Virus record (IMG/VR): IMGVR_UViG_3300009104_001827
Location: 124,001-188,000 of that record
Direction: 5' to 3' (one strand)
Length of the DNA: 64,000 bases
Shown here: positions 10,587 to 25,710 of the stretch, piece after piece
Numbering within the stretch: the stretch's first letter is position 1
How the letters are laid out: each line of letters begins with the position of its first letter
Notes under the pieces: model-generated
Seen by the model: the letters and a program-made list of their open reading frames with translations, nothing else
Told to the model about the DNA's origin: nothing
Database searches by the model: none
Position numbers and translations under genes: made by a program

Positions 10587-10953
10587 ATATAACGCAATGG
10601 GAAATCTCACTAGAGACCCCGAAATAGTAGATGTATCAGACCAACACAAGGTTTGTAAATTCAGCATCGCAATTAATAACCCAATCAAGAAGACCGTCCT
10701 CTATATGGACGTTGAAGCTTGGAACAGAACGGCGGAAAATTGCCAAAAATACCTTACTAAAGGGTCCGCAGTAGCTGTAGATGGAAGGCTTGACTCCAAA
10801 AAGTGGACCACCGACAGCGGGCAAAATCGCTCGAAAATTTTCTGCGTAGCGGATAACGTGCATTTCGTCAGGCTAAAAAATCAAGACGAAGAGCAACCAG
10901 CAGGAACAGCGAACGCAGGGGAAGAAGAGGAAGAGGAAGAGGTTCCATTTTAA
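10576..10953 (+). CDS. ssb: Single-stranded DNA-binding protein
   Basis: GNLTRDPE, VAVDGRL OB fold; acidic tail EEEEEEVPF. Confidence 0.95.
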   Translation: MLNRYNAMGNLTRDPEIVDVSDQHKVCKFSIAINNPIKKTVLYMDVEAWNRTAENCQKYLTKGSAVAVDGRLDSKKWTTDSGQNRSKIFCVADNVHFVRLKNQDEEQPAGTANAGEEEEEEEVPF

Positions 10954-12035
10954 TGCCTCAACTAAATGTAAAATGCCCTATAAATAAATTATCCTTCGGA
11001 AACGTTTCAGTTAATATACTGAGAGAGCTCTTCAAGAAGGGGGTTGATGCGTGTGTATTTCCCACTGGCCAACCAGACCTGTCTAGCTATGACCAAGCCT
11101 CAAAGGAGTTCTACGAATGGTTAAGGAGCGCTATGGCTCGGCGTCTTACAGATGTCGACCGAAGTAATCCCACCTTAAATATTTGGCATATAAACGGAAG
11201 TGAGAACAAAATCTCAGACAAAAATACACTCTTAACGTTTCACGAAACCGGCCACCCTACGCCAGAAGAACTAAATTTAGCAAAACTATACGACAAGGTT
11301 TGCTTTGGCAGCAATTACGCAAGAGAGGCCTTTCAAGATTGCGGAGCCACAAATGTCACAAATGTCCCTATGGGATTAGACCCCGACTTATCCTGTCTCC
11401 CACAAAAGAAATCTAGCGACAATATTCATTTTGGGCTAATGGGAAAATGGGAAAGAAGAAAGCATACGTCAAAAATTATAAAATGCTGGGCAAAAACATA
11501 CGGTAACAACAATCGCTATGAATTATCATGCTGCGTAGGGAATAGTTTCCTTGAAGAAAGCCAGCTCGAATCCGCCAAACTAGAAGCCTTGGGGTCCCGG
11601 GAATTTAGCAATATTAACTTCCTTCCGTGGCTTCCAAAAAACTCCCAAGTTAACGACTTCATCAACTCAATAGACGTAGACCTCAGTGGCATGAGCGGAG
11701 CGGAGGGCTGGAACCTTCCAGCGTTCAACGCGACCGCACTAGGAAAATGGAGCATAGTACTGGACTGTACATCCCACAAAGATTGGGCCACGGAAGGGAA
11801 TTGCATCCTAATAAGCCCTTCAGGAACGGAAAGCATAGAAGACGGAATCTTCTTTACCAAAGAGTCCCCATTCAACAGGGGTGTTAAATTTACATTCAAC
11901 GAAGACTCCCTAATCAAGGCCATGGAGCTAGCGGAGCATAAATGCAAAACAGAAAACACCAAAGGGAAAGAACTCGCAACTCAATTCACCTACTCAAACA
12001 CTGTAGATAAATTACTGGATATTTGCTTCTCATAG
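10953..12035 (+). CDS. GT4-family glycosyltransferase
   Basis: GKWERRKH, AEGWNLPAFNATALGK GT-B motifs. Confidence 0.8.
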   Translation: MPQLNVKCPINKLSFGNVSVNILRELFKKGVDACVFPTGQPDLSSYDQASKEFYEWLRSAMARRLTDVDRSNPTLNIWHINGSENKISDKNTLLTFHETGHPTPEELNLAKLYDKVCFGSNYAREAFQDCGATNVTNVPMGLDPDLSCLPQKKSSDNIHFGLMGKWERRKHTSKIIKCWAKTYGNNNRYELSCCVGNSFLEESQLESAKLEALGSREFSNINFLPWLPKNSQVNDFINSIDVDLSGMSGAEGWNLPAFNATALGKWSIVLDCTSHKDWATEGNCILISPSGTESIEDGIFFTKESPFNRGVKFTFNEDSLIKAMELAEHKCKTENTKGKELATQFTYSNTVDKLLDICFS

Positions 12036-12426: not shown

Positions 12427-14340
12427 ATGCCGGACTTCAAAGACAACCCTCTTTTCAATGACCAAATAAGAAAATTCGTTGGGGCAGTACCCAACGTTTC
12501 CTTTGATTATATCTGGGATGAATCATTAGCTAAGTGGGTTCCCAGCAAAGGGGTAAGCGTCACAATTGATGACGTGGATCTAGACATAGACCTAGAGGAC
12601 GAGGTGACCCACGGACTACTTGCAATCACCAATGCTAAACTTGATACAATAAATACAAGTCTTAGTAATCTGGACTCAGACTCCTCAGACGAAACGACGC
12701 ACGCACTACTGACCCTAAACAACACTAAACTTGACGCAATAAACTCAAAACTAGAAAACCTAGATTCCTCAGACGAAACCACACACAACCTACTTACGCT
12801 CACAAATACAAAACTGGACCTTTCCAATACAAAGTCCGACCTGACCAATGTCAAGCTGGATTCTGCAAACACCAAGCTAGATTCCGCAAACACCAAGCTA
12901 GATTCCGCAAACACCAAGCTTGCCAGCCTAGAAGACCTCACAGAGCATACTCACGTAATGCTCAATCAGAACCACACTCACCTGCAAAACGTAAAATCCG
13001 CAGTAGACTCATTAAAGTCGGCGAACCAGGCAGACGCCTTACTTTTAAGAACAATCCAAACCGCAGCAGACGTTAAACTCGGAGAGATAAAGGGAATCAA
13101 CACCAGCATATTGACTGAAAGCGAAGAGGCTAACGTAAACCTCCTAAATATCGCCTCAACAAACTCAGGCATCCTAGATTCCTCGGAGGACCTAGAGGTC
13201 TTAGTTGGAACTTCAAACACCTTACTAGGAGAGGTCAAGCAGGCAGTGGAAGACCTAGAACTCAACATTGCTGGCGACGCAGAAACGCATAGAATACTTT
13301 CAGGAATTTCCGGCCAAGATAAATCACATTATTTTGAAAACGAAGAGCTGCTTAGATATATAAACGACGCAAACGAGGACACCAACCTCTCCTTACAAGA
13401 ACTAAAAGGAAACTATCGAGACCTGACTTTTCATGTTAGGAAATTTGAAGAAGAAACAATAATACAAGAGTGTCCAGACGAAACTTTTTCACCCAACCTA
13501 AGCGACCCCAGGAGTTTCCCCGACAGGGTTCACAACAAAGCCACAACCAACGGGAGAATCAACGACTCAACCACTAAAGAAATAAACCAAGTCCCAATAG
13601 TTGCTGAAGGCTTCAACAAAGATGTCGCAGAAAGACATGAAGTGTTCGACGAAGCTATGCCATTTTCTATAAAAATGGAGAGCTACAAAGGGTCCTCATC
13701 CGGATACCATTCAATATACCCCTTCGACAAGCGATTGGGTCTCGATGACAAAATTACAATCTACAACGACAGCCCATACCCCTTCGACATCAGCTTCAGA
13801 GGAGGAGACAAAACAACTCTTGCGGAAGGATTTTCCATGGAGCTATCCAAGGAAGAAGCTGCCCAAGCTTCGGTGAAAAGAGATTATACAATATCTGGCT
13901 TCGAAATAAGATACTCCATAGAGAGAATGTATACCCCTGAAAATAATTACTATGATCCAGAAACCGATAAATACCCAATCAACAGGCAACAAACCCACTC
14001 TAGGTTAGGGGTAGACGGAATACTTGCGGATGCACAATATATATATTTAAGATTTGAGGAGACATGGAAAAGGACAGCAATAGCAAGTTGGGCAACATGC
14101 GTTTTCAGAACCGCTTCATCCGCAAAAATACACTACTTCGAGCCCTATACTACAGCAAGCCATCTTTACGTCAACACTCTCGACGGCCTGAAAAGAATTG
14201 CGATTGCCGACTGGATTACATGCGAGCGCGTTCCACTAGAATGCCACAATAATATCTGGGCCGACAATAATTATCTATATGCTAAAACTAAATCCAATTG
14301 GAGAAAGTTTCCACTAGCAACTGATTATGAAAATATCTAA
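12427..14340 (+). CDS. Putative virion fibre-like protein (coiled coil plus C-terminal triple repeat)
   Basis: Heptad NTKLD repeats; three YLY...WKR..L..W-like units at C-terminus. Confidence 0.55.
   Translation: MPDFKDNPLFNDQIRKFVGAVPNVSFDYIWDESLAKWVPSKGVSVTIDDVDLDIDLEDEVTHGLLAITNAKLDTINTSLSNLDSDSSDETTHALLTLNNTKLDAINSKLENLDSSDETTHNLLTLTNTKLDLSNTKSDLTNVKLDSANTKLDSANTKLDSANTKLASLEDLTEHTHVMLNQNHTHLQNVKSAVDSLKSANQADALLLRTIQTAADVKLGEIKGINTSILTESEEANVNLLNIASTNSGILDSSEDLEVLVGTSNTLLGEVKQAVEDLELNIAGDAETHRILSGISGQDKSHYFENEELLRYINDANEDTNLSLQELKGNYRDLTFHVRKFEEETIIQECPDETFSPNLSDPRSFPDRVHNKATTNGRINDSTTKEINQVPIVAEGFNKDVAERHEVFDEAMPFSIKMESYKGSSSGYHSIYPFDKRLGLDDKITIYNDSPYPFDISFRGGDKTTLAEGFSMELSKEEAAQASVKRDYTISGFEIRYSIERMYTPENNYYDPETDKYPINRQQTHSRLGVDGILADAQYIYLRFEETWKRTAIASWATCVFRTASSAKIHYFEPYTTASHLYVNTLDGLKRIAIADWITCERVPLECHNNIWADNNYLYAKTKSNWRKFPLATDYENI
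12859..12921 (+). repeat. 3 x 21-bp tandem repeat (DSANTKL)
   Basis: GATT(C)(T/C)GCAAACACCAAGCT(A/T) three times. Confidence 0.95.
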
Positions 14341-15052
14341 ATTTAAAGAAATCGACACTTACGAAAACGCGCTCCACCAGGAAAATGTTGAAGAAGCCCT
14401 TGAGTCCATAAAAACGCAGGACCAAGAGTTGCACAATTCTACTACCGCACAAATACAGAACCTTCACGACGCCAGCTCCGCGCAATCACTAAACCAGCAC
14501 ACGGCAATCGCAGATGACCTAGACGAAGTAAAGTCTATACTTAGCGGGATCAAGCCAAGATCTTCCCGCACGAAAATATTCAACCAAAAGATAGATGAAA
14601 ATTTCATCATACTAGAAACTACCGATGAATTGATGAGGCCGCCGGACCAATGCGAAGATATTTTTAATCCAGCAACAGCGCTAAAAGAGGTTAACCAGTT
14701 TTTTGTTTTAGAAGAAAATATAGACGAGGAGCACTGCGCACAAAGAAAATTCAACTTCGATACAGACGCTAAGTATGCGATCCGAATGGACACCTATTCT
14801 GGGGATGCAGACGGATTCTACAACGTATACGGGCACCTTGAAAATAATAGCTCAGATATATTTTTAATCAACGACACCCTATACAAGCTAGAACTCCGGC
14901 TCGATGAAGTCAACGAGAGAGTGCAGCTCGAAGACGGCTTCAATTTAAGCTTTAATGATTTAGAAAAAGACAACATTCTATCATTTAAAAGAAACCATAC
15001 AATATCGGGCTATACTTTCAAATATATAATAGAAGGAAAAGCAAACTCTTAG
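14327..15052 (+). CDS. Hypothetical protein, partly paralogous to middle of upstream gene
   Basis: Acidic; TKIFNQKIDENFII vs TFHVRKFEEETII resemblance; coupled by overlap. Confidence 0.7.
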   Translation: MKISKFKEIDTYENALHQENVEEALESIKTQDQELHNSTTAQIQNLHDASSAQSLNQHTAIADDLDEVKSILSGIKPRSSRTKIFNQKIDENFIILETTDELMRPPDQCEDIFNPATALKEVNQFFVLEENIDEEHCAQRKFNFDTDAKYAIRMDTYSGDADGFYNVYGHLENNSSDIFLINDTLYKLELRLDEVNERVQLEDGFNLSFNDLEKDNILSFKRNHTISGYTFKYIIEGKANS

Positions 15053-15736
15053 ATGAAAATCTCCAGCAATAAAAGCCTAATCAAGGAAATAGCCCCAGGG
15101 GTATTCTCAATAGGGAACAACCCCTTTGCTCCAGCCTTCCTGCTGGACGCCAACACCCAGAAAGCTTCTGTGTCTGGAGTAGAAGTTGTGCTAGATGGAG
15201 ACCTCCAGCATCTCTTTGACGAACTTAATTTAGTTGACGAAAAACACACGACCGACATTCAGACGAACGCAGACGCAATCTCCAGTGAAGCCACAAGAGC
15301 GAATACGGCGGAGTCCGCGATTCAGTCCGAAGTGGACCAGAACAGCTCCAAGCTGGCAAATATTGAAGATAATGCCACCGCCGATCAGACTAGCGAAGAG
15401 ATTAAAGCTTCGTACGAAGCCAACGCAGATACTAACGAATTCTCCGACATCAACAAATCCAAGCTAGACGGCATCGAGGATAATGCCAACAATTACGTTC
15501 ACCCAAATCATTCCGGAGAAGTTTCGTCCACCTCAGACGGGGCAACAATTATATCCGACAATGTAGTGGATGAGGCCAACCTCAAGGTTTCCAATCCTCC
15601 ATCTGATGGCTATATGCTTACAGCGCAATCCAGCGCATCAGGCGGATTAGTCTGGGTATCTCCCACAACCGGGGGCGGGCTATCGGAGGCAGAAGTGAAG
15701 GCTATAGCCTTCAGGTCGGCGATTATTTTTGGCTAA
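15053..15736 (+). CDS. Tail-fibre-like protein
   Basis: KLANIEDNATADQT / KLDGIEDNANNYVHP repeats typical of phage fibre shafts. Confidence 0.65.
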   Translation: MKISSNKSLIKEIAPGVFSIGNNPFAPAFLLDANTQKASVSGVEVVLDGDLQHLFDELNLVDEKHTTDIQTNADAISSEATRANTAESAIQSEVDQNSSKLANIEDNATADQTSEEIKASYEANADTNEFSDINKSKLDGIEDNANNYVHPNHSGEVSSTSDGATIISDNVVDEANLKVSNPPSDGYMLTAQSSASGGLVWVSPTTGGGLSEAEVKAIAFRSAIIFG

Positions 15737-16198
15737 TCAAAGAGCCTTCACCAAAACATGAACTATGCCGCCCGTTTCCTTTACGGTGTCACTAAGAAAC
15801 AGGTCAAACCCGGTGTTGGTTATATTTTTGACGACCGTAGAGTAAAACAACACATCGTCCCCATCAGGCGGCTCGTATTGCACAAAAACCGACGGAGGAG
15901 TATCAAAGGTGGTTCCAAACGGTATTGTCGCAGACTCAAAGTTCAACGGAACGTCATACTTGATGGACACCTCTCTTTTTTGTCCCGCCAGAGCTTTCCA
16001 AACCAATTCCCCGCTACCATCATGGTCTGAAATATAAAACTGCCCCTGAGCATCAGAAGCTAAAGCTCCCTCAAAAGGAGGCGTTGCATTGTCCAAGAAC
16101 GAAGAATCAACCTTCTGAACCTTAAGCGGCATTGCCGCCAATAAATTACCTAATTGAGCCTGAACGTTTTGTAAACTCATATCACAAAGACTCCTCAA
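15737..16198 (-). CDS. Virion protein with H-type-lectin-like C-terminal domain
   Basis: FGTTFDTPPSVFV...KNITNTGFDL pattern. Confidence 0.55.
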   Translation of the reverse strand: MRSLCDMSLQNVQAQLGNLLAAMPLKVQKVDSSFLDNATPPFEGALASDAQGQFYISDHDGSGELVWKALAGQKREVSIKYDVPLNFESATIPFGTTFDTPPSVFVQYEPPDGDDVLFYSTVVKNITNTGFDLFLSDTVKETGGIVHVLVKAL

Positions 16199-18089
16199 TT
16201 GTTACGGTAACATCCAATATGTTGCCTGCATTAGTTATAACCTGATTATCTATAATCAATTCACTATCATTAACTATACCGAACCCTGCTTCCAAATTAG
16301 ACGTGCCGTCTTGTTTCGGGGTAGTAATCCCTGCGTCATACGGAATAGAAAATGTATTACCCCCAGCTGGTGTCGCGGTAGCGGTTAGCTTAGAAGTATT
16401 ATATACATCTACTCCCAAGTCAACCGCCAGGTAATCCGGAGCAAGGATTGTTACAGACCTTTGGTCAAAACCTCGCACAGTACCCGTATCATCCCGCTGA
16501 AAGGTTTCTCCGATTAACTTCTCCCCCTCGAAGCTTATCGTAAATTGCCCCCGAGGAGTGTCATCGGATATTAAAATCTGGAACGAGAAAGACGTATTAC
16601 TATTCTTGGAAATTGCCCCAACTGTTATATTTGGATCGGAGACAGAAAGTATAGAAAGAGATTCAAGGGGTTCACCCACACTAACATTAACGTTACTATA
16701 CTGAGCCCCAGCAGAAGAAGAACGAAATGTGTTCGGGGAAAAGTTAACCGACGGAACGGTTCCCTCGGACTGAATCTGTATAGAGGACGTTGAAGAGGAA
16801 GCGCTCCTGCCGTTCGACTGCTTAAAAACAGAAACGCTCATTGTCCCACTGGTGTAATTACTCGCATTTTCTCCGGAGACCACAAATGGACCAGAATTAA
16901 TATCAGCAGGTATTGTTACAAATTTCAAAACATAACTTTTTGAATAATTATGGTTATCAAAATTGGAAGCAGTAACATTAACATCAACGCTCTCTCCTGT
17001 ATTATTTATTATATTATTGGAGTTGGGGTAGCTAAAACTAAGAGAGACAGAAGGGGCTGAATTATTTGTTATAATATCATTGTCAGCAGCATAAGATTGA
17101 GATTGGTTGCCTGTTATATCCTGAACAGTTACGTTAAAACTCTTCGCCTGAACACTATTCGATGCGCCGCCGATAGTAACATTAAACTCGTAGTCATAAG
17201 TGCCGTCTCCGTTGTCATTAAAGTTAGGATTGTTAACAGTCTTTGATTGAAGGGCTCCGCCCGAAACAACAATCTTGCCGATCTCTTTTGAGGACTTAAC
17301 GTACACCCTTGCGGTATCGCCATTTTTAGCCTCGGTCTGTGAATGAGACTGATTGCCGTCGTGTGCATTAAACGAGGTCTGCCCGTAAAAAGTTCCAGTA
17401 TCCGTTCGGTTTACAAACTTTGCTTCAAGGACCTGGGGAGGAGTATCCTTCTCAAGAGAAAGGTAAGTCTGCCTGCCTCCGTTTTTAAATAAATATGTTG
17501 TAGGCACTGAACAGTCCAGCCTAAGCGTAGTATTAAAAGAATAGCCGTTGCTATTTGTTGACAACTGAGAAAAATCAACATCCTGATACTGAGGGTCTTC
17601 GCCGCTAACAGCATAACTTATGGAAGGCTTGAACGTCTGAGCATCTCCCCTTTCTACCAACAACTTAACATCTACCTGATCACTAGCGGTTTTGACCTTT
17701 CTTACTACAGCCCCACTGAACTCAGACTCCAAGATTTCCTCGACCCCGCCAACAGCGGTTACGTTAGTTACAAAAATCGGCCCGGTATTTATCCCCCCAG
17801 ACGACTCCCCAGAGGAACCGCCAGCGTCAGACCCAACAATATCCCCAACAACAATTTGGTCAAAATAACCAACCTGCCCCCTAAATATATGCCCGCTTAT
17901 ATCTCCACTCTCAGACGTAAAGTCTACTATCTGAGAGATTCTCGTATCGCCAATAACCGTCAGATCACCCTGAACGGTTAGATTATCCTGAAAATCCTTA
18001 TGACCAAAGACGTCCTCGTCGCCCGAAAGGCTCACGAAGGTCCCTAAGGTGCCCTCCCCAAAAGGATTTTTCTGGATAAATTCAGCCAT
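16182..18089 (-). CDS. Ser/Thr-rich beta-sandwich (Ig-like) virion protein
   Basis: 635 aa, S/T/N/G rich; VTVQDITGN, APSVSLS Ig-like strands. Confidence 0.55.
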   Translation of the reverse strand: MAEFIQKNPFGEGTLGTFVSLSGDEDVFGHKDFQDNLTVQGDLTVIGDTRISQIVDFTSESGDISGHIFRGQVGYFDQIVVGDIVGSDAGGSSGESSGGINTGPIFVTNVTAVGGVEEILESEFSGAVVRKVKTASDQVDVKLLVERGDAQTFKPSISYAVSGEDPQYQDVDFSQLSTNSNGYSFNTTLRLDCSVPTTYLFKNGGRQTYLSLEKDTPPQVLEAKFVNRTDTGTFYGQTSFNAHDGNQSHSQTEAKNGDTARVYVKSSKEIGKIVVSGGALQSKTVNNPNFNDNGDGTYDYEFNVTIGGASNSVQAKSFNVTVQDITGNQSQSYAADNDIITNNSAPSVSLSFSYPNSNNIINNTGESVDVNVTASNFDNHNYSKSYVLKFVTIPADINSGPFVVSGENASNYTSGTMSVSVFKQSNGRSASSSTSSIQIQSEGTVPSVNFSPNTFRSSSAGAQYSNVNVSVGEPLESLSILSVSDPNITVGAISKNSNTSFSFQILISDDTPRGQFTISFEGEKLIGETFQRDDTGTVRGFDQRSVTILAPDYLAVDLGVDVYNTSKLTATATPAGGNTFSIPYDAGITTPKQDGTSNLEAGFGIVNDSELIIDNQVITNAGNILDVTVTIEESL

Positions 18090-18580
18090 TAGAAATCAGT
18101 AAATGTAGCAGTTGCGGTTACTCTTCCCCCTACCTGCGAAGACGCGCCTATACTTTCGTTATGGTTTAGTAAAAACTTCTCCCCGCCAAACATAAAAGTT
18201 TGGCCAGGTGGAATATATAATTCGGACACAACCTTTGATTGGTTTCCTGGATCAACATCCTTGCGAATGGTTACGTCGCTCCACACTGCTGGCGCAGACC
18301 CAGGAACGTCTGCTGGACTTGACTCAGATATAGCTTGCCACGCCTTAGAATCATGCCTCACACGGTCATCGATTCCATACACGCCGCCATTACCCCCGTC
18401 GGCAGCCCACGGACTTAGGTCCGCAGGATTGAACCCTATCGCCTGAGCGACAAAAAGATCAATAGTTTCTCCCTCTGTGGTAGTGTTACAGAAATATATT
18501 CCTAAGTTTGCGTATTTTTGGCTGCTGGGTGCGGAAATAATTTCTGTATATTCATTACTTACTACTATATTTTTAATCAT
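18089..18580 (-). CDS. Small structural protein with inserted CBM5/12-like module
   Basis: Internal YGIDDRVRHDSKAWQA...VPGSAPAVW segment. Confidence 0.55.
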   Translation of the reverse strand: MIKNIVVSNEYTEIISAPSSQKYANLGIYFCNTTTEGETIDLFVAQAIGFNPADLSPWAADGGNGGVYGIDDRVRHDSKAWQAISESSPADVPGSAPAVWSDVTIRKDVDPGNQSKVVSELYIPPGQTFMFGGEKFLLNHNESIGASSQVGGRVTATATFTDF

Positions 18581-20691: not shown

Positions 20692-20771
20692 CACAACACC
20701 CTCGCTTTCAGTAATTAATGAAAAAAATGTCTATAAAAAACTTACATTCCAAAGAACCTCCCCCGAAAGGG

Positions 20772-20777
20772 GTGTAA
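20772..20777 (+). promoter_or_regulatory. GTGTA-box upstream of DUF2827 pair
   Basis: GTGTAA 9 nt before ATG 20787, abutting CCCC-GAAA-GGGG hairpin. Confidence 0.55.
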
Positions 20778-20786
20778 ATAAGCTCA

Positions 20787-21926
20787 ATGAGGGTAGCAAT
20801 CACAGCAACACTAGACTACAGTTTTTTCTCCAACGGGCTAATTCAGAATATTATATCCCTATATGAATTACTAGAGAAGTGTGGATTCAAGGTTTCCCTG
20901 CTTGATTTCGGAGACAAAAGCAGAAGTGGCTCGACCCATGCCCATAATAAACTAAACAAGAAAAATATATTGCGCTGGGGCGAATTCACCAGGAAGCAAC
21001 AGCACTTTGATTTAGTTATATGCGCAGGAGTATCCCTCGATGAAAACTTAAAAGATTCGCTAACCAAAGCCAACCCCAAAATAAAAACAGTGGGAGTACA
21101 TTACGGCAATAATTTAATTAACCTGATGTGCGAATGGTTTTCAAAAGTCCCGCCCAAAAGGATTTCCGGGCACCCCGACTGCCCCCCGATGAAGCTTAGG
21201 CATGAAAAACTATACGAAGAAACGTGGATCTCGGAACATTATCTTTTCGCAAAAGAATTTTATGAATACACAGACGAAAGCCCGGTCCGCACAATGCCCT
21301 ATATATGGAGCCCCAGTTTTATTGAAGGGGAGGCAATAGACCACGGAATTAATATAAACTATATTCCAGTCAAGAAACCCAACTTAGCCGTGGTCGAGCC
21401 TAATATAAATATATCAAAAAGCTTTTTAATTCCGATGCTCGCAATTTCAAGCGTCCTAGAATCCAGCCCAGACATATTTGAACATGCATGTATTTACGGA
21501 TCGGATTCCTTTTTTAGGAACAGAGAGTTCCTTAAGGAATGGATACACGACTGCACGTCGCTCGGAGAAAACAAAGACCGATTCACATTCTTCCCCAGGA
21601 AGCCCATTCCAGGCATTATGCACGTGAAAAATCCAGCAATAATAAGCCACCAACACTTAAATGAATTAAACTACACACACCTAGAAGCCCTGTTTTGCGG
21701 TTACCCATTAATACATAATTCTCCCCCATTTAAAGAGTTTGGATATTTCTACGAAGGCTTCAACCTTCTGGAAGCCGCAGAAAAAATAAAAGAAGCAATA
21801 GAACAGCACAACGACAACCTTTCAGCATACTTAGAAAAAGGGAAAGAAGCCGCCTGGAAGTACAGTCCTGAAAATCGAAGCAATATTGAGTGCACTAAGA
21901 AGCTGGTACTAGATTTGTTTAAATGA
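20787..21926 (+). CDS. DUF2827-family putative glycosyltransferase
   Basis: SNGLIQN, VVEPNINISK..LIPML, ISHQHLNELNY..LEAL..GYPLIHNS, GYFY. Confidence 0.8.
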   Translation: MRVAITATLDYSFFSNGLIQNIISLYELLEKCGFKVSLLDFGDKSRSGSTHAHNKLNKKNILRWGEFTRKQQHFDLVICAGVSLDENLKDSLTKANPKIKTVGVHYGNNLINLMCEWFSKVPPKRISGHPDCPPMKLRHEKLYEETWISEHYLFAKEFYEYTDESPVRTMPYIWSPSFIEGEAIDHGININYIPVKKPNLAVVEPNINISKSFLIPMLAISSVLESSPDIFEHACIYGSDSFFRNREFLKEWIHDCTSLGENKDRFTFFPRKPIPGIMHVKNPAIISHQHLNELNYTHLEALFCGYPLIHNSPPFKEFGYFYEGFNLLEAAEKIKEAIEQHNDNLSAYLEKGKEAAWKYSPENRSNIECTKKLVLDLFK

Positions 21927-22996
21927 ATATTGCAATAACGAGCCTACTCCACAGAAACCCGTGGAAATCAAGACAGAAGCAGTCAGCCGTCAACCTATAT
22001 GATTGTCTTCAAAACTTAGGTTGTAAAGTTTTTTACATAACCCCTTCAACGGATTACCAAAATTTCAACAAAGACCACGTCGGCTACCCAGAGCGGGCTA
22101 TGACAAACAAGGGTGCACCCAAGGTAGATATACTGATCATCCACGGCTACGTTCCCTCGGAAAAATTCTTTAATGAATTTTTCAAAGTAAACAAAAAAAC
22201 CAAAATCATTCACAACTATCTCGAAAACCCACTTGAAGAACTCTCTTGCGGACTGTCCTCCAAAGAAAAATTAAATATTTCAAAATTCACCGAAGAGCTC
22301 TGGCTGCCACCCCACCACATAAGTAAAAAAAACCTAATGGAGTCACTCCACCCTTCGGGTTGCGAGGCAAAAGAGTCTCCTTACTTATGGAGTTCATTTT
22401 TCATAGATGAAGCGTCTCGACAAAAAAAGGGAAGAACCCTACGGTTTAACAAAGACAGGGCCGGGGGAATATCAATCCTAGAGCCAAACATCTCCTATAT
22501 AAAAAATTTCATCATTCCCATTTTAGCTAGCGAAAAAGCAAATCTCAAAAGCCCGGAGGCGATCAATACAGTAAGCGTCTTCAACACGCAACACCTTAAA
22601 AACACAGAATTTTTGCATTCGATTACCTCAGGAATGTCGATAAACAAACAAAAAAAACTCTATTTAAGCAACAACTGGGAAGCTCCAGACATATATAGCC
22701 GTTGCGGACAACACATAATTTCCCACCAAGTAGACAGCGAACTTAATTATCAGCACCTAGAAGCCCTATACTTGGACCTTCCGCTTATACATAATTCAAA
22801 AACAATATCATCCACGGGGTATTATTACAAAGATAGCGAAATAGAGCTTGCAGCAAACCAGTTAATAAATTCCATCCTTCACCACACGAACAACTTAGGA
22901 GAATACAGAAACGCCTCAAGGGAGCTAATCTCTATCTTCTCCCCAGGAAACAAGCGAAACCTGGACATATATGCCAGCTTGATTTTTGAAAAATAA
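21923..22996 (+). CDS. DUF2827-family paralog
   Basis: ILEPNISYIKNFIIPI, ISHQVDSELNYQHLEALYLDLPLIHNS, GYYY; ATGA overlap. Confidence 0.75.
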   Translation: MNIAITSLLHRNPWKSRQKQSAVNLYDCLQNLGCKVFYITPSTDYQNFNKDHVGYPERAMTNKGAPKVDILIIHGYVPSEKFFNEFFKVNKKTKIIHNYLENPLEELSCGLSSKEKLNISKFTEELWLPPHHISKKNLMESLHPSGCEAKESPYLWSSFFIDEASRQKKGRTLRFNKDRAGGISILEPNISYIKNFIIPILASEKANLKSPEAINTVSVFNTQHLKNTEFLHSITSGMSINKQKKLYLSNNWEAPDIYSRCGQHIISHQVDSELNYQHLEALYLDLPLIHNSKTISSTGYYYKDSEIELAANQLINSILHHTNNLGEYRNASRELISIFSPGNKRNLDIYASLIFEK

Positions 22997-23038
22997 AAGT
23001 TCCCACAACTTGATTTCCGAATGTAACTATAGACAACT

Positions 23039-23686
23039 ATGGCAAAGAAAATACTTGCCGAGGAGTTCAGCCTAAATAGTTACGATCTAAAATTAGACGG
23101 CAACAATAAGTTGCAGTTCAATAGCGTAACACAAGCTGACGCAACAGACATTAGTTCTATCGATACTCGTGTCTCTAAAGAAACATCCCTAAGGGACTCA
23201 AAGGTTAAAAGCATTGACACTCGTGTTTCCACGGAAGTCTCAACCAGAGGAAAAAAAATCGACAGCCTCGATATTAGAGTTTCTCTTGAAACCTCTACCA
23301 GAGGAAAAAATATCGACAGCCTCGACACTAGAGTTTCTCTTGAAACCTCTAATCGTGGAGTGGCAATCAACAGCATCGACACAAGGGTGTCTTCAGACAT
23401 CAAAAGTCTCGACGAGCGCTTGACGGACGAAGAAAATACGACGAAGATTTTAGCGAATCAAGACGTAACGAACGGCGCTTCAAGCCAAGCAGTAAGCCTT
23501 GTCGGCCTTGGATTTGTAGAAAATTCGGAACCAGTGGTCGTTGGAATGCTTCGAAGCACCGACTCCGACGATCCTATCGTTGCTTGCATGCTCTCAGGAG
23601 CCGCATCGCACTCAACTGCAACATTCTTGTTCTCAGACGAGATTCCTTCCAATAATTATAAGTTAGACGTTATCCTAACAAGATAA
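23039..23686 (+). CDS. Short fibre-like protein with 18-aa S(I/L)DTRVS repeats
   Basis: Five repeats, then small beta-rich C-terminal domain. Confidence 0.65.
   Translation: MAKKILAEEFSLNSYDLKLDGNNKLQFNSVTQADATDISSIDTRVSKETSLRDSKVKSIDTRVSTEVSTRGKKIDSLDIRVSLETSTRGKNIDSLDTRVSLETSNRGVAINSIDTRVSSDIKSLDERLTDEENTTKILANQDVTNGASSQAVSLVGLGFVENSEPVVVGMLRSTDSDDPIVACMLSGAASHSTATFLFSDEIPSNNYKLDVILTR
23156..23422 (+). repeat. 54-bp (18-aa) tandem repeats
   Basis: ATCGACAGCCTCGA units at 23258 and 23312, variant ATCAACAGCATCGA at 23366. Confidence 0.9.
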
Positions 23687-23698
23687 CCTTAAGTTTCA

Positions 23699-24976
23699 AT
23701 GGCCAGTAAAATACTAGCAGAGGAACTTCAGTCGGGCTCTTATAGCCTGAGTACTAACGAAAGTAACGGAGGGACAGATATAGGCGCTATCGAAGAATTC
23801 GACAGCACCTCAGCCTACTCCGCTAACGATAAAGTTAAATACCGCCCTAACGCCAGCACGGCATATTCCGTATACAAAATCAATTACGACATGCCCGCAG
23901 ACAAGCTTCCCGCAAATGCGCCGGAGGCTGACGAATGGACCGGAGCTAACACCTATGACGCAGACTCGGCGTACTCCGCAGGAGACAAAGTCAACTACTT
24001 AGGAAGAGGCTATATGGCTCACGCTGATCATGACGCAAGTAACCACAACATTTCGAACGCTGCCCACTGGGGGCTGGCGAGCGCAATGTTTACCAACATT
24101 ACCTTGCGTATAGATGGGTTTAACGATGGAGATATTGCCGATACACGGACAGTTGAAAGTCTTAACGTTAGAATTGCGAATGAAGAATCAGCGGACGGCG
24201 TAGCCAAGGAGGTATTCTCCACAGAAGATGGCTTCGCAACAAATAAGACCAGCATCGACGTACGGGTTGCGCTCGAAAAGACCACTCGCGAAAGTGAGGT
24301 CAGCAGTACAGAGGACGACATCGAAGCTGAGAAAACCGCTCGCGAAAGTGAGGTCAGCAGTACAGACGACGACGTCGAATCCGTCACGAGCAATCGTGGC
24401 AGCAAAGTGACCTCGGTCGATAACCGGTGGTCATCCGAAGTGTCAACATGGAATTCTTCCCTTTCTGAAGAAGAGGGTACAATGACGTACATCGAGGGCA
24501 TTCCCTTGACTAAGCCTGACTCAAGCCCCAGCAATGGGACAACCTTAGGGTCTGGATCTGACGACTACTCAATCAACGCTGACGGGAACGTGGTTACTAT
24601 CACCTATCCCTCCAGGACCTTTGGGGTAGATCCAACCAGCCTTACCGCCTTCGATGATGAAGGAACTTACGTCAAAGGCGACCAGGTTTCCTACGACAGC
24701 AAGTCATGGCAGGCCCTAAGCGACCATGACGGATCACAAGGAACCACTCTCGATAACCCAGGCGACACCGCCGGGGAATGGGAAAACATCACCAATAAAA
24801 CGGTTCCCGCCGCAGTTGCATCCTTAAGGATGACTGCCGCTGGGTTCGCCGCAGGTGCACCAATGCTTATGTGCATGGGGCAAGGAACCCCTACAGCGAC
24901 ACAGGCAAGCTTTGTTCTTTCGGCCGCGCCGGAAGAAGACAGCCACTACGTGATGGATGTAGCAGTTGCTATGTAA
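23699..24976 (+). CDS. Fibre/adhesin-like paralog with three CBM5/12-like modules and 18-aa repeats
   Basis: N-terminus MASKILAEE like upstream MAKKILAEE; Y..GD.V.Y modules; 54-bp duplication at 24281/24335. Confidence 0.65.
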   Translation: MASKILAEELQSGSYSLSTNESNGGTDIGAIEEFDSTSAYSANDKVKYRPNASTAYSVYKINYDMPADKLPANAPEADEWTGANTYDADSAYSAGDKVNYLGRGYMAHADHDASNHNISNAAHWGLASAMFTNITLRIDGFNDGDIADTRTVESLNVRIANEESADGVAKEVFSTEDGFATNKTSIDVRVALEKTTRESEVSSTEDDIEAEKTARESEVSSTDDDVESVTSNRGSKVTSVDNRWSSEVSTWNSSLSEEEGTMTYIEGIPLTKPDSSPSNGTTLGSGSDDYSINADGNVVTITYPSRTFGVDPTSLTAFDDEGTYVKGDQVSYDSKSWQALSDHDGSQGTTLDNPGDTAGEWENITNKTVPAAVASLRMTAAGFAAGAPMLMCMGQGTPTATQASFVLSAAPEEDSHYVMDVAVAM

Positions 24977-25017
24977 TAGTCTCACTAATTAGAATATAAT
25001 TAAATTCTAACATTTTT

Positions 25018-25042
25018 AGCCCCCCATTGGGGGGCTTTTTTT
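25018..25042 (+). terminator. Rho-independent terminator
   Basis: AGCCCCCC-ATT-GGGGGGCT followed by T-run. Confidence 0.85.
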
Positions 25043-25056
25043 GTGTAAACCCAACC

Positions 25057-25710
25057 ATGGGCATATTTGACATTTTCCGCAATTGGCAAAAAAATGAGCT
25101 CGGCCAGTTCTCCGAGAAGAAGGGACAAAAGAAAAAGAGCAAGAAATCCTCAAGCATAGACCCCGAAAAAGCAAAGATCATGCGAAAACTCAAACATAAA
25201 TCGAAATACCTTGAGCTAGAATACGAGGAAGCGAAAGAGATTCTAGAGATCGCTAAAACCGAATTCTTTACAAGCATACAAGAGTATTGCCAAGCCAACC
25301 CCGAGGCAAAGAACCCTCTTTGTCCCGTCGAGCCCAACAAGAAAAAAGACAAAACAGACATGGATTTCCCCGACGAACTAAAAACAATCTATCGTGAAAT
25401 AATTAAAGCGACACACCCAGACCACCACCAAGAGGGTGACGAAGAGGAGCTAACAGAAACATTGATTAGCGCAACACACGCAAAACAAGAAAACAAAATA
25501 GAAGACCTAATCAATATATCCTTCGACCTAGATATTGATATATCAAACATTAGCCTAGACCTTATAGAGGAAGTGGAAAAGGGTTTAAGAAAAAAAGAAA
25601 TTAAAATAAAGAAAATGAGAAAAAATAATGCGGTAGTTTGGTATTATGCTCCGCCGGACCAACGGAAAATATTTATCGAACGCATTTGCCCCATTAAAAA
25701 AGAAGAATAA
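25057..25710 (+). CDS. Protein with J-domain-like HPD segment
   Basis: LKTIYREIIKATHPDH; start ATG 25057, 8 nt after GTGTAA (25043-25048). Confidence 0.6.
   Translation: MGIFDIFRNWQKNELGQFSEKKGQKKKSKKSSSIDPEKAKIMRKLKHKSKYLELEYEEAKEILEIAKTEFFTSIQEYCQANPEAKNPLCPVEPNKKKDKTDMDFPDELKTIYREIIKATHPDHHQEGDEEELTETLISATHAKQENKIEDLINISFDLDIDISNISLDLIEEVEKGLRKKEIKIKKMRKNNAVVWYYAPPDQRKIFIERICPIKKEE

What the first reader, a model, noticed from the sequence alone, without database searches (positions are those of the whole stretch)
20772..25042. Candidate dedicated fibre-glycosylation system: tandem DUF2827 GTs plus two Ser/Thr-rich 18-aa-repeat fibres
Seen: a self-contained unit from GTGTA box to terminator, with two DUF2827 paralogs followed by two paralogous proteins (MA.KILAEE start) carrying S(I/L)DTRVS.E.S.R repeats. 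Established: DUF2827 is an uncharacterised family described from Burkholderia; 18 = 7+11 periodicity fits trimeric coiled-coil stalks. Inference: a GT pair (catalytic plus partner) O-glycosylates repeat serines on virion fibres, much as bacteria glycosylate adhesins. I know of no described phage example.
Basis: partly seen in the sequence, partly recalled or inferred. Interest (0 to 1): 0.75.

Follow-up and report, generated by a model that had tools for sequence, protein, structure and literature searches.

The report
Phage fibre-glycosylation cassette (DUF2827 pair)
An uncultivated 211-kb marine phage carries two paired sugar-transferase genes of an uncharacterised family right beside two serine/threonine-rich coiled-coil fibre genes, and the same arrangement in dozens of distant phages suggests, without proving it, that these phages coat their own fibres with sugars.

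Summary
Window 20787-24976 encodes two DUF2827 paralogs (A, B) and then two paralogous fibre proteins (C, D). A GTGTAAA box lies at 20772 and a strong terminator at 25018-25036. A is predicted with high confidence to have a GT-B glycosyltransferase fold. A and B are predicted to form a heterodimer (ipSAE 0.74; best control 0.02).

C is predicted as a small N-terminal beta domain, one 100-residue helix made of the 18-residue repeats, and a beta knob that weakly resembles phage fibre tips.

The link between transferase and fibre goes beyond this genome. Of 63 IMG/VR phage loci with DUF2827, 58 carry at least two copies. In 36, a homologous S/T-rich repeat fibre follows on the same strand. In 28 of those 36, known glycan-building enzymes (GT2, GT25, GT32, GT34, sulfo- and methyltransferases) sit between pair and fibre. 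A 2026 preprint independently reports DUF2827 copies beside bacterial trimeric autotransporter adhesins.

No glycan, acceptor or donor is shown. Some DUF2827 genes sit in other contexts, including what looks like a DNA-modification island. Phage virion glycosylation is already known from mycobacteriophages. Verdict: a well-supported but unproven candidate, a new variant of a known kind.

The parts
20760..20772 (.). G+C hairpin (CCCCCGAAAGGGG) in the divergent intergenic region between the portal-like gene and gene A
   Evidence: Read directly. Listed as a terminator-like site on the minus strand.
20772..20778 (+). GTGTAAA box, 8 nt upstream of the ATG of A; candidate promoter or initiation element
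   Evidence: Genome-wide, 10 of 17 copies lie 5-9 nt before a start codon, against a median of 8% for composition-matched 7-mers.
20787..21926 (+). Gene A: DUF2827 protein (379 aa) with predicted GT-B glycosyltransferase fold; keeps all family-conserved residues
   Evidence: Pfam PF10933, 182.8 bits. AF2 pLDDT 92.2, pTM 0.91. Foldseek PDB top matches are MshA, BshA, PimB', T4 AGT, GtfA and SdgB. ESM Atlas neighbours are GT4 enzymes at TM 0.63-0.71. Residue conservation.
21923..22996 (+). Gene B: second DUF2827 paralog (357 aa). It keeps the C-domain (presumed donor-site) motifs, but the N-domain motifs are degenerate (N16S, G17R, G107E, R271N in A numbering). Predicted partner of A.
   Evidence: Pfam, 155.4 bits. 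27% identity to A. Belongs to the monophyletic 'second-position' clade, support 0.993. Residues. Predicted A-B complex: ipSAE 0.74, best control 0.02.
23021..23027 (+). Degenerate box ATGTAAC, 11 nt before the ATG of C; possible separate promoter for C-D (inference)
   Evidence: Sequence. The RNA contig in run X9 begins at 23040.
23039..23686 (+). Gene C: fibre protein (215 aa) with an N-terminal beta domain (residues 9-31), one long helix (35-134) and a C-terminal beta knob (135-214)
   Evidence: AF2 pLDDT 88.5. The knob weakly resembles pyocin and tailspike tips and H-type lectin. Sixteen homologues found. Covered by RNA contigs.
23156..23425 (+). 18-residue repeat array of C (residues 40-129, five units) with consensus S-[LI]-D-T-R-V-S-x-E-x-S-x-R. 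S+T is 30% over the slightly longer stalk, residues 38-133.
   Evidence: A 54-bp tandem duplication lies at 23239-23351.
23699..24976 (+). Gene D: larger paralogous fibre (425 aa) with the same N-terminal start, CBM5/12-like modules, a degenerate 18-residue stalk and the same C-terminal knob family
   Evidence: BLASTP against C. Pfam CBM_5_12, E 7e-10, two stretches, best at residues 318-361. C-terminal HMM hit, E 3e-4.
24251..24466 (+). Degenerate 18-residue repeats of D (residues 185-256, four units)
25018..25043 (+). Intrinsic terminator (8-bp stem, 7 G-C pairs, loop of 3, T run). The next gene's GTGTAAA box follows immediately at 25043-25049.
   Evidence: The RNA contig ends at 25026, inside the hairpin.

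Best explanation
The locus is a phage-encoded protein glycosylation cassette. A and B are cytoplasmic GT-B glycosyltransferases of the DUF2827 family that work as a heterodimer. In this clade A is probably the active enzyme. B is probably a partly degenerate partner, or else a second-step transferase. Using host nucleotide sugars, they would O-glycosylate serines and threonines exposed on the long helical, probably trimeric, coiled-coil stalks of the two fibre proteins C and D encoded just downstream. These fibres would then be mounted on the virion by their small N-terminal domain and display a lectin-like knob.

This window holds the minimal version: the pair plus its substrates. Related phages insert further glycosyl-, sulfo- and methyltransferases between pair and fibre, which would lengthen and decorate the glycan.

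Shown here: the gene order and its conservation, the GT-B fold, the helical stalk, and the presence of C-D in RNA libraries.
Predicted in silico only: the A-B heterodimer.
Inferred: that the fibre is the acceptor, that the linkage is to Ser/Thr, that the stalk is a trimer, that the fibre sits on the virion, and what the sugar is.
For: 1. Family and fold. Both genes are full-length DUF2827. The AF2 model of A has pLDDT 92.2, and every top PDB match is a GT-B transferase, mostly retaining GT4 enzymes. The list includes the adhesin O-glycosyltransferases GtfA (4pqg, 5e9t) and SdgB (7vfo). ESM Atlas gives GT4 neighbours at TM 0.63-0.71.

2. The pair.
- 58 of 63 IMG/VR phage loci have at least two DUF2827 ORFs; in 46 they overlap or lie within 30 bp.
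- All second-position copies form one clade with support 0.993.
- Both types keep the C-domain motifs E204, N206, K211, N295, Y296, E300, H310, N311 and S312.
- Predicted A-B complex: ipSAE 0.74 (runs 0.74, 0.76, 0.59) against a best control of 0.02. That mark was reached by 58 of 80 solved complexes and 2 of 110 mismatched pairs.

3. Linkage to fibres.
- In the 211-kb genome the fibre N- and C-terminal HMMs hit only C and D, which lie directly after the pair.
- A homologous fibre (same N-terminal domain, S/T-rich periodic stalk, same C-terminal knob) lies 13-4026 bp downstream on the same strand in 36 of 63 phage loci. Most of the other 27 loci end too soon or have their flank filled by large further ORFs, some resembling the glycan enzymes typed.
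- In the sampled loci the intervening genes are GT25, GT2, GT32-like, GT34, exostosin-like, Sulfotransfer_2 and methyltransferases.
- A different phage type (L015, L044) has DUF2827 beside an 18-period 'SLETRLAAEE' coiled coil.
- DUF2827 loci on contigs assigned to cyanobacterial and other bacterial MAGs/SAGs lie beside proteins with 28-36% S+T. One of these proteins (L090) has a weak YadA-anchor match.
- A preprint reports 327 DUF2827 genes, often in 2-3 successive copies, next to trimeric autotransporter adhesins (10.64898/2026.01.22.700529).

4. Substrate-like features.
- The stalk is 30% S+T, against a genome median of 12%.
- Serine at repeat position 1 is present in all 90 distinct units, although the anchor pattern used to collect them allowed S or T.
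- An 'S-hydrophobic-D/N' core recurs in every stalk variant across clades.

5. Fibre nature.
- AF2 gives one helix over residues 35-134 and a beta knob.
- Repeat periods of 14, 18, 22, 25 and 36, and a 7-residue insertion in P0031, fit heptad/hendecad coiled coils.
- The same stalk is fused to a virion structural, head-decoration-like domain in P0036 (phrog_1731, E 1e-23).
- The neighbours are portal-like and fibre-like genes.

6. Rival acceptors. The genome has no thymidylate-synthase/hydroxymethylase family gene.
Against: - There is no direct evidence of any glycan on C or D.
- Gene adjacency within related phages is partly inherited synteny, not independent co-occurrence.
- Fold matches do not distinguish protein-modifying transferases from those acting on small molecules, lipids or DNA. 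The best matches (MshA, BshA, PimB') act on small molecules or lipids, and T4 DNA alpha-glucosyltransferase scores as well as GtfA or SdgB.
- Some DUF2827 genes lie in other contexts. One is a solo copy after a thymidylate-synthase-family gene, near a DNA methyltransferase and two carbamoyltransferases. Another is a pair followed by a Cys-rich VWA lipoprotein. The genome's own third copy has no fibre neighbour.
- L011 and L012 have only the A-type gene before the fibre, so the pair is not obligatory there.
- Fibres with the same repeats exist without any transferase gene in the 14-kb contigs held (L107-L109).
- The heterodimer score could reflect a family homodimer interface. A-A was not tested, and the alignments used were my own rather than the calibrated ones.
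- Serines in a coiled coil are also explained by structure alone.
Confidence: 0.55

Rival explanations
1. The DUF2827 pair, and the extra enzymes in relatives, build or modify a non-protein glycan during infection. Candidates are host envelope polysaccharide or LPS, or a soluble or lipid acceptor, for example for superinfection exclusion or receptor masking. On this reading the fibre genes are only neighbours in a variable structural and accessory region.
For: The closest solved structures are GT4 enzymes acting on small molecules, lipids or polysaccharides (MshA, BshA, PimB', glycogen synthase). The intervening genes in relatives (GT25 'LPS biosynthesis', GT2, sulfotransferases) are typical of polysaccharide pathways. 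A DUF2827 gene lies in a cell-surface sugar island on a contig assigned to Prochlorococcus (L092). The third copy and L098 have no fibre neighbour.
Against: Order and orientation are conserved (pair, then tailoring enzymes, then fibre, then J-like gene) across phages whose transferases are only about 30% identical. The fibre gene is directly adjacent (13-37 bp) in eight loci. Independent associations exist with S/T-rich fibrous proteins in bacteria. The genome has no nucleotide-sugar synthesis genes. I did not look for a flippase, polymerase or priming transferase.
Confidence: 0.2
2. A and B glycosylate phage DNA (hypermodified bases), as T4 alpha- and beta-glucosyltransferases do, to evade restriction.
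For: T4 AGT is among the structural matches (1y8z, 1xv5, TMq 0.59). An AGT cluster appears among ESM Atlas feature hits. In L096 and L097 a solo DUF2827 follows a Thymidylat_synt-family gene near a DNA methyltransferase and carbamoyltransferases. This locus lies next to ribonucleotide reductase.
Against: The 211-kb genome (CheckV estimate 100% complete) has no PF00303 family gene that could make hydroxymethyl pyrimidines. Sulfo- and methyltransferases, GT25 and GT34 in the homologous islands of relatives are not expected for DNA modification. The link to fibre genes would be left unexplained.
Confidence: 0.08
3. There is no functional coupling. Transferase genes and repeat-fibre genes simply share a recombination-prone accessory hot spot beside the portal and structural module, and the serine-rich repeats are purely structural.
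For: The island's content is highly variable. Assemblies break inside the repeats. Fibres with these repeats occur without nearby transferases (L107-L109). A-type occurs alone in L011 and L012.
Against: A hot spot would not keep the same two orthologous DUF2827 genes in the same order at its upstream edge and the same fibre family at its downstream edge in 36 loci. The theme also recurs with unrelated GT4 genes near a fibre with the same repeats (L106) and with bacterial adhesins.
Confidence: 0.12

Closest known systems
SdgB/SdgA glycosylation of staphylococcal Ser-Asp-repeat adhesins (PMC3794999, PMC8561734)
   Same: SdgA and SdgB are two GT-B transferases that O-glycosylate serines of a long repeat region in fibrous surface adhesins. 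The two are said to be tandem paralogs beside the adhesin genes; that detail is from my own knowledge, not read in these papers. SdgB (7vfo) is among the fold matches. The phage repeats also carry an invariant Ser close to Asp (S-x-D).
   Different: There is no detectable sequence homology; similarity is at fold level only, with 10-15% identity. SD repeats are disordered dipeptide runs, whereas the phage stalk is a helical 18-residue repeat. By my own knowledge SdgB and SdgA act one after the other; here a heterodimer is predicted. The host is a bacterium, not a virus.
GtfA/GtfB with serine-rich repeat adhesins of Gram-positive bacteria (PMC6973325, PMC5207161; structure 5e9t)
   Same: A GT-B catalytic subunit works with a GT-B-like partner as a complex. 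Both are encoded in the adhesin locus, and further transferases in the cluster extend the glycan in a strain-specific way. The phage island mirrors this: a constant pair, variable tailoring enzymes and the substrate gene. GtfA is among the fold matches.
   Different: GtfA belongs to GT4 and has a DUF1975 insertion, whereas DUF2827 is a separate sequence family. There is no accessory Sec system here. The phage stalk is about 30% S+T, less than in SRRPs (own knowledge).
DUF2827 genes next to trimeric autotransporter adhesins (bioRxiv 10.64898/2026.01.22.700529)
   Same: [quoted passage not shown] The same glycosyltransferase role is proposed but untested.
   Different: The neighbours here are phage fibres with no YadA anchor, signal peptide or head domains. 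The preprint covers Burkholderia, Veillonellales and Pasteurellales and does not mention viruses.
Mycobacteriophage virion glycosylation (Freeman et al. 2023, PMC10527164, cited in PMC12619734)
   Same: Phage-encoded glycosyltransferases near structural genes modify virion proteins.
   Different: The targets there are the C-termini of capsid and tail-tube subunits, not fibres. The transferases are of other families, and the hosts are actinobacteria. In that system the glycans were shown experimentally.
T4 alpha-glucosyltransferase (DNA hmC glucosylation)
   Same: A phage-encoded GT-B enzyme with comparable fold similarity (1y8z, TMq 0.59).
   Different: It needs hydroxymethylated DNA, and no hydroxymethylase-family gene is present in this genome. 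It has no paired paralog and no link to fibres.

Membership tests
Pfam DUF2827 (PF10933) | Full-length match to the family profile above the gathering score | tested here: met
   A scores 182.8 bits (profile positions 13-357 of 362) and B 155.4 bits (14-361 of 362), against a cut-off of 25. The third copy elsewhere in the genome scores 126.6 bits.
Pfam DUF2827 (PF10933) | Family-conserved residues: NGLxQN loop, G107-N108, E204/N206/K211, R271, N295-Y296, E300, H310-N311-S312, G319-Y320-x-Y322 | tested here: met
   A keeps all of them. B keeps the C-domain set but has S16, R17, E107 and N271, so the feature is fully met for A and only partly for B.
GT-B fold glycosyltransferases | Two Rossmann-like domains with an inter-domain cleft | tested here: met
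   AF2 pLDDT 92.2, pTM 0.91. At least 500 PDB matches at E<=0.001; all 50 listed are GT-B, with TMq up to 0.62. ESM Atlas TM 0.63-0.71 to GT4 clusters.
CAZy GT4-like / Pfam Glycos_transf_1 | Sequence-level membership (profile match) | tested here: not met
   DUF2827 is the only Pfam hit. A family profile finds no solved relative by sequence; the best E-value is 0.039 and the hit is unrelated.
GT-B fold glycosyltransferases | Transfer of a sugar from an activated donor to an acceptor | not testable with these tools
   Needs an enzyme assay.
Two-transferase adhesin O-glycosylation systems (GtfA/GtfB, SdgB/SdgA) | Two GT-B genes encoded beside the gene of a repeat-rich fibrous substrate | tested here: met
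   Conserved in 36 of 63 phage loci.
Two-transferase adhesin O-glycosylation systems (GtfA/GtfB, SdgB/SdgA) | Physical complex of the two transferases (GtfA/GtfB type) | tested here: inconclusive
   The prediction passes the mark (ipSAE 0.74, best control 0.02). It is a model only, and A-A was not tested.
Two-transferase adhesin O-glycosylation systems (GtfA/GtfB, SdgB/SdgA) | O-linked sugars on repeat serines or threonines of the neighbouring protein | not testable with these tools
   Needs glycopeptide mass spectrometry.
DUF2827 with trimeric autotransporter adhesin loci | The neighbour is a trimeric autotransporter (YadA-like anchor) | tested here: not met
   C and D have no YadA_anchor or other autotransporter domain. 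Only the bacterial-MAG locus L090 shows a weak anchor match (E 0.005).
Phage DNA glycosyltransferase systems (T4 AGT/BGT type) | The genome encodes a pyrimidine hydroxymethylase (thymidylate synthase family) to make the acceptor base | tested here: not met
   No PF00303 match in the 211-kb genome. The control search found it in 10 of 14 reference genomes.
Trimeric coiled-coil phage fibres | Long helix with heptad/hendecad periodicity and a distal beta knob | tested here: met
   Helix over residues 35-134 and beta domain over 135-214. Repeat periods 14, 18, 22, 25 and 36, and a +7 insertion. The knob gives weak matches to trimeric fibre tips and H-type lectin.
Trimeric coiled-coil phage fibres | Trimeric assembly and attachment to the virion | not tested

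The most novel reading that the evidence does not exclude
DUF2827 pairs are the initiating protein O-glycosyltransferases of a widespread system that recognises an 'S-hydrophobic-D/N' motif on helical coiled-coil stalks. The system would be shared by marine phage fibres, giant-virus proteins and bacterial trimeric autotransporter adhesins. In phages, the variable set of tailoring enzymes placed between pair and fibre (glycosyl-, sulfo- and methyltransferases) would give each lineage its own glycan coat on its fibres, sometimes sulfated. That coat would be a fast-evolving layer of host recognition or protection that has gone unnoticed in ocean viruses.
Probability: 0.3. Interest if true: 0.85.

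Novelty: new variant of a known kind. Interest (0 to 1): 0.66.

Why it matters
If true, it would assign a function to a domain of unknown function with about 950 sequence clusters. DUF2827 would be a protein glycosyltransferase for coiled-coil fibres in phages, giant viruses and bacterial adhesins.

It would extend phage virion glycosylation from mycobacteriophage capsids to the fibres of abundant uncultivated marine phages. It would also reveal a modular 'glycan island' whose varying enzyme content could diversify fibre surfaces without changing the fibre protein. That bears on host recognition, protease resistance and particle stickiness in sea water.

The cassette in this window is the minimal form, two enzymes and two substrates. 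That makes it a convenient system to test by co-expression.

Tried and rejected
- Searches of deposited phage genomes (megablast of the locus; tblastn of A and of the 635-aa neighbour) found nothing. No cultured relative is available, and the host remains unknown.
- A family profile against PDB sequences gave no relative.
- PHROGs has no family for A, B or D.
Narrower ones worked.
- The genome-contig scan returned only six loci, on contigs assigned to Prochlorococcus, Synechococcus, Sphingobacterium and an alphaproteobacterium. It returned no Burkholderia locus, so for the adhesin association I rely on the preprint plus one weak YadA-anchor case.
- The listing of cluster members gave no organism names.
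- The reciprocal search starting from the fibre found few loci, and several begin inside the repeat array, so 'fibre implies transferase' could not be quantified.
- I considered that the 'moraphage' lineage (PMC12619734) might be this phage's group. I found no evidence either way.
- GTGTAAA as an over-represented word was rejected. Its positional bias before start codons was kept.

Full report
**What is there.** The window is part of a 211,117-bp IMG/VR virus record (positions 124001-188000), estimated complete. The same sequence is held by marine metagenomes. Between a divergently transcribed portal-like gene (weak match to phrog_16240) and a ribonucleotide reductase small-subunit gene lie four co-directional genes: A 20787-21926, B 21923-22996, C 23039-23686 and D 23699-24976.

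A and B are full-length DUF2827 proteins, at 182.8 and 155.4 bits against a cut-off of 25. They are 27% identical. A third, more divergent copy lies about 100 kb away with no fibre neighbour.

C and D share the MA(K/S)KILAEE start, an 18-residue repeat stalk and a C-terminal domain. C has five clean repeat units and D four degenerate ones. D also carries CBM5/12-like modules.

A strong terminator closes the unit at 25018-25036. As a word it is not enriched in the window. Genome-wide, 10 of 17 copies sit 5-9 nt before a start codon, against a median of 8% for composition-matched words.

**What the transferases look like.** AlphaFold2 with an 86-sequence alignment gives A a confident model: pLDDT 92.2, pTM 0.91. 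All top Foldseek matches in the PDB are GT-B glycosyltransferases. They are mostly retaining GT4 enzymes (MshA, BshA, PimB', glycogen synthase), with TM-scores of 0.5-0.62 at 10-15% identity. The list also contains T4 DNA alpha-glucosyltransferase and the adhesin O-glycosyltransferases GtfA and SdgB. The ESM Atlas gives the same picture. By sequence the family stands alone: no other Pfam family matches, and there is no solved relative.

**The pair is a conserved unit.** An exhaustive search finds 949 clusters of relatives at E<=0.001. A scan of IMG/VR gave 96 relatives, of which 79 loci were kept.
- Of 63 non-redundant phage loci, 58 hold at least two DUF2827 ORFs. In 46 they overlap or lie within 30 bp.
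- In a tree of 113 copies, every second-position copy, from this phage's close relatives and from phages only about 30% identical, falls in one clade with support 0.993. That clade also holds the genome's own third copy. First-position copies form separate, well-supported clades.
- Both types keep the C-terminal-domain motifs. Window B and its close orthologues have degenerated the N-domain NGLxQN loop and lost G107 and R271.
- A complex prediction of A with B scores ipSAE 0.74 (0.74, 0.76 and 0.59 in three runs) against a best control of 0.02. That mark was reached by 58 of 80 solved complexes and 2 of 110 mismatched pairs. The counts hold only roughly, because my own alignments were used.
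- The interface is pseudo-symmetric, so a homodimer of either paralog cannot be excluded.
- L011 and L012 have only the A-type gene before the fibre.

**The fibres.** AlphaFold2 models C as a small N-terminal beta domain (residues 9-31), one uninterrupted helix (35-134, pLDDT about 90-97) that is the repeat array, and a C-terminal beta domain.
- The C-terminal knob gives weak but consistent matches to the distal domains of R-type pyocin fibres, cyanophage Pam1 and Sf6 tailspikes, and to the trimeric H-type lectin of Helix pomatia (E 0.02-0.1).
- Across homologues the stalk period is 14, 18, 22, 25 or 36 residues. One homologue has units spaced by 25 (18+7) residues. All of these are sums of 7 and 11, as expected for coiled coils.
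- The number of units ranges from 3 to 17. Related assemblies often break or carry N runs inside the array.
- In another phage protein (P0036) the same stalk is fused to a virion structural, head-decoration-like domain (phrog_1731, E 1e-23).
- The stalk is 30% Ser+Thr against a genome median of 12%. Ser at repeat position 1 is invariant in 90 distinct units, although the anchor pattern allowed S or T. An 'S-hydrophobic-D/N' core recurs in all stalk variants.
- Trimer state and virion attachment were not tested.

**The link between transferases and fibres.**
- In the phage's own genome, HMMs of the fibre N- and C-terminal domains hit only C and D.
- In close relatives, on contigs of up to 206 kb, the gene after the pair is again such a fibre.
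- In the more distant phages the order is: pair, one to three further enzymes, a fibre starting MAK(I/V)F(S/R)TE with a highly periodic S/T-rich stalk (20-35% S+T) and the same knob, and then the same J-domain-like gene that follows D here.
- Pfam identifies the intervening enzymes in the sampled loci as GT25, GT2, GT32-like DXD, GT34, exostosin-like, Sulfotransfer_2 and methyltransferases.
- Overall, 36 of 63 loci show the fibre 13-4026 bp downstream on the same strand. Eight of these are directly adjacent (13-37 bp).
- Most of the other 27 loci end too early or have their flank filled by large further ORFs, some resembling the enzymes typed.

Further cases point the same way. A different phage type has DUF2827 beside an 18-period 'SLETRLAAEE' coiled coil (L015 and L044). 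Contigs assigned to cyanobacterial and other bacterial MAGs and SAGs have DUF2827 beside proteins with 28-36% S+T; one of these proteins, in L090 (a MAG labelled Sphingobacterium), has a weak YadA-anchor match. A T4-like contig has a fibre with the same repeats near two tandem GT4 genes instead of DUF2827 (L106). [quoted passage not shown]

**Expression.** Marine metatranscriptome runs hold the locus. In run X9 one 1,988-nt contig of depth about 100 spans 23040-25026, from the start codon of C to the terminator hairpin. A and B are represented only by a 162-nt piece of depth 20. In run X6 all six pieces lie within C and D. These are assembled contigs from RNA libraries, so DNA carry-over is not excluded, but the ends coincide with gene and terminator boundaries. 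This suggests an abundant C-D transcript, as expected for structural genes, and much lower levels for the enzymes. A degenerate box (ATGTAAC) lies 11 nt before the ATG of C.

**Evidence against, and rivals.**
- Nothing here shows a glycan.
- Part of the co-occurrence is inherited synteny.
- Some DUF2827 genes sit elsewhere. One is a solo copy directly after a thymidylate-synthase-family gene, near a DNA methyltransferase and two carbamoyltransferases, which looks like a DNA hypermodification island. Another is a pair followed by a Cys-rich VWA lipoprotein.
- For this phage the DNA reading is weakened by the absence of any PF00303 gene.
- The polysaccharide reading is weakened by the conserved placement of the fibre gene and by the lack of nucleotide-sugar genes. 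Neither rival is excluded.
- Fibres with these repeats also occur without a transferase gene in the 14-kb contigs held (L107-L109).

**Comparison with known systems.** Functionally the closest are the adhesin-dedicated O-glycosylation systems of Gram-positive bacteria. In one, GtfA/GtfB and further cluster transferases act on serine-rich repeat proteins (PMC6973325, PMC5207161). In the other, SdgB/SdgA act on Ser-Asp repeat adhesins (PMC3794999, PMC8561734). The closest by family is the DUF2827-autotransporter association. Phage virion glycosylation itself is already known from mycobacteriophages (Freeman et al. 2023, cited in PMC12619734), but there it uses other enzymes and targets capsid and tail tube.

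This locus is a member of DUF2827 and of the GT-B fold class. It is not a sequence member of GT4, not an autotransporter locus, and not a T4-type DNA system. DUF2827 is mentioned in only two papers of the searched library, and neither concerns viruses.

**Verdict.** I put about 0.55 on fibre glycosylation by the A-B pair. I rate it a new variant of a known kind, with interest 0.66.

Noticed in passing
window 20772-20778(+), 25043-25049(+), 20640-20634(-), 5212-5206(-), 57854-57848(-); genome-wide: GTGTAAA lies at a fixed 5-9 nt before start codons (10 of 17 genome copies, against a median of 8% for composition-matched 7-mers). Two copies follow G+C hairpins. An RNA contig for gene C starts at its start codon. 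This could be a phage promoter element giving leaderless or near-leaderless mRNAs.
   Followed up: partly
window 25057-25710 (+): A 217-aa protein with an HPD motif and a weak DnaJ match (E 0.056) is the downstream neighbour of the fibre gene in the related phage loci examined. It may be a co-chaperone for fibre folding. No PHROG or Pfam family reaches threshold.
   Followed up: partly
G000:C1:45393-46412 (-) = L003:1474-2526, outside the window: A third DUF2827 copy of the 'second-position' type, with G and D in place of E293 and E300. It sits next to a MazE/AbrB-like gene and small secreted-looking proteins, with no fibre nearby.
   Followed up: partly
window 10953-12035 (+): Another putative GT-B glycosyltransferase (phrog_2170, E 1e-14; weak Glycos_transf_1 match). 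It follows an SSB-like gene, and this arrangement is conserved in relatives (L020, L064).
   Followed up: no
window 12427-18580: A cluster of further fibre-like genes. They are a 637-aa protein with TNTKLDSAN heptad-like repeats, 241- and 227-aa coiled-coil proteins, a 635-aa fibre- or spike-like protein on the minus strand, and a 163-aa protein with a CBM5/12-like motif. None has a PHROG family.
   Followed up: partly
L096 and L097, 6586-9149: On a phage contig of about 300 kb, a solo DUF2827 directly follows a thymidylate-synthase-family gene and lies near an N6/N4 DNA methyltransferase and two carbamoyltransferases. This may be a DNA hypermodification island that uses a DUF2827 enzyme.
   Followed up: no
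L070-L087 (giant-virus MAG contigs): In Nucleocytoviricota contigs a DUF2827 gene is followed by a 1200-1500-aa ORF that also contains a DUF2827 domain. An ESM Atlas cluster of 286 members combines DUF2827 with a DXD sugar-binding domain. Small S/T-rich ORFs lie nearby on the other strand.
   Followed up: no
L106:5814-12104: A different phage has a 912-aa fibre with the same SxDTRV repeats, then a PD-(D/E)XK nuclease, then two tandem GT4-family transferases. This may be a non-orthologous version of the same theme.
   Followed up: partly
L004, L006 (N runs); L005, L007, L008, L014, L101, L102, L104 (contig ends): Assemblies of related phages break or are scaffolded with Ns inside the fibre repeat arrays, and unit numbers range from 3 to 17. 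The arrays are length-variable and hard to assemble.
   Followed up: partly
window 22240-22465 (inside gene B): In DNA run X3 a 148.5-kb contig of a related strain matches the locus, except for a 224-bp segment of B that is the same length but diverged. This points to local mosaicism in the partner transferase.
   Followed up: no
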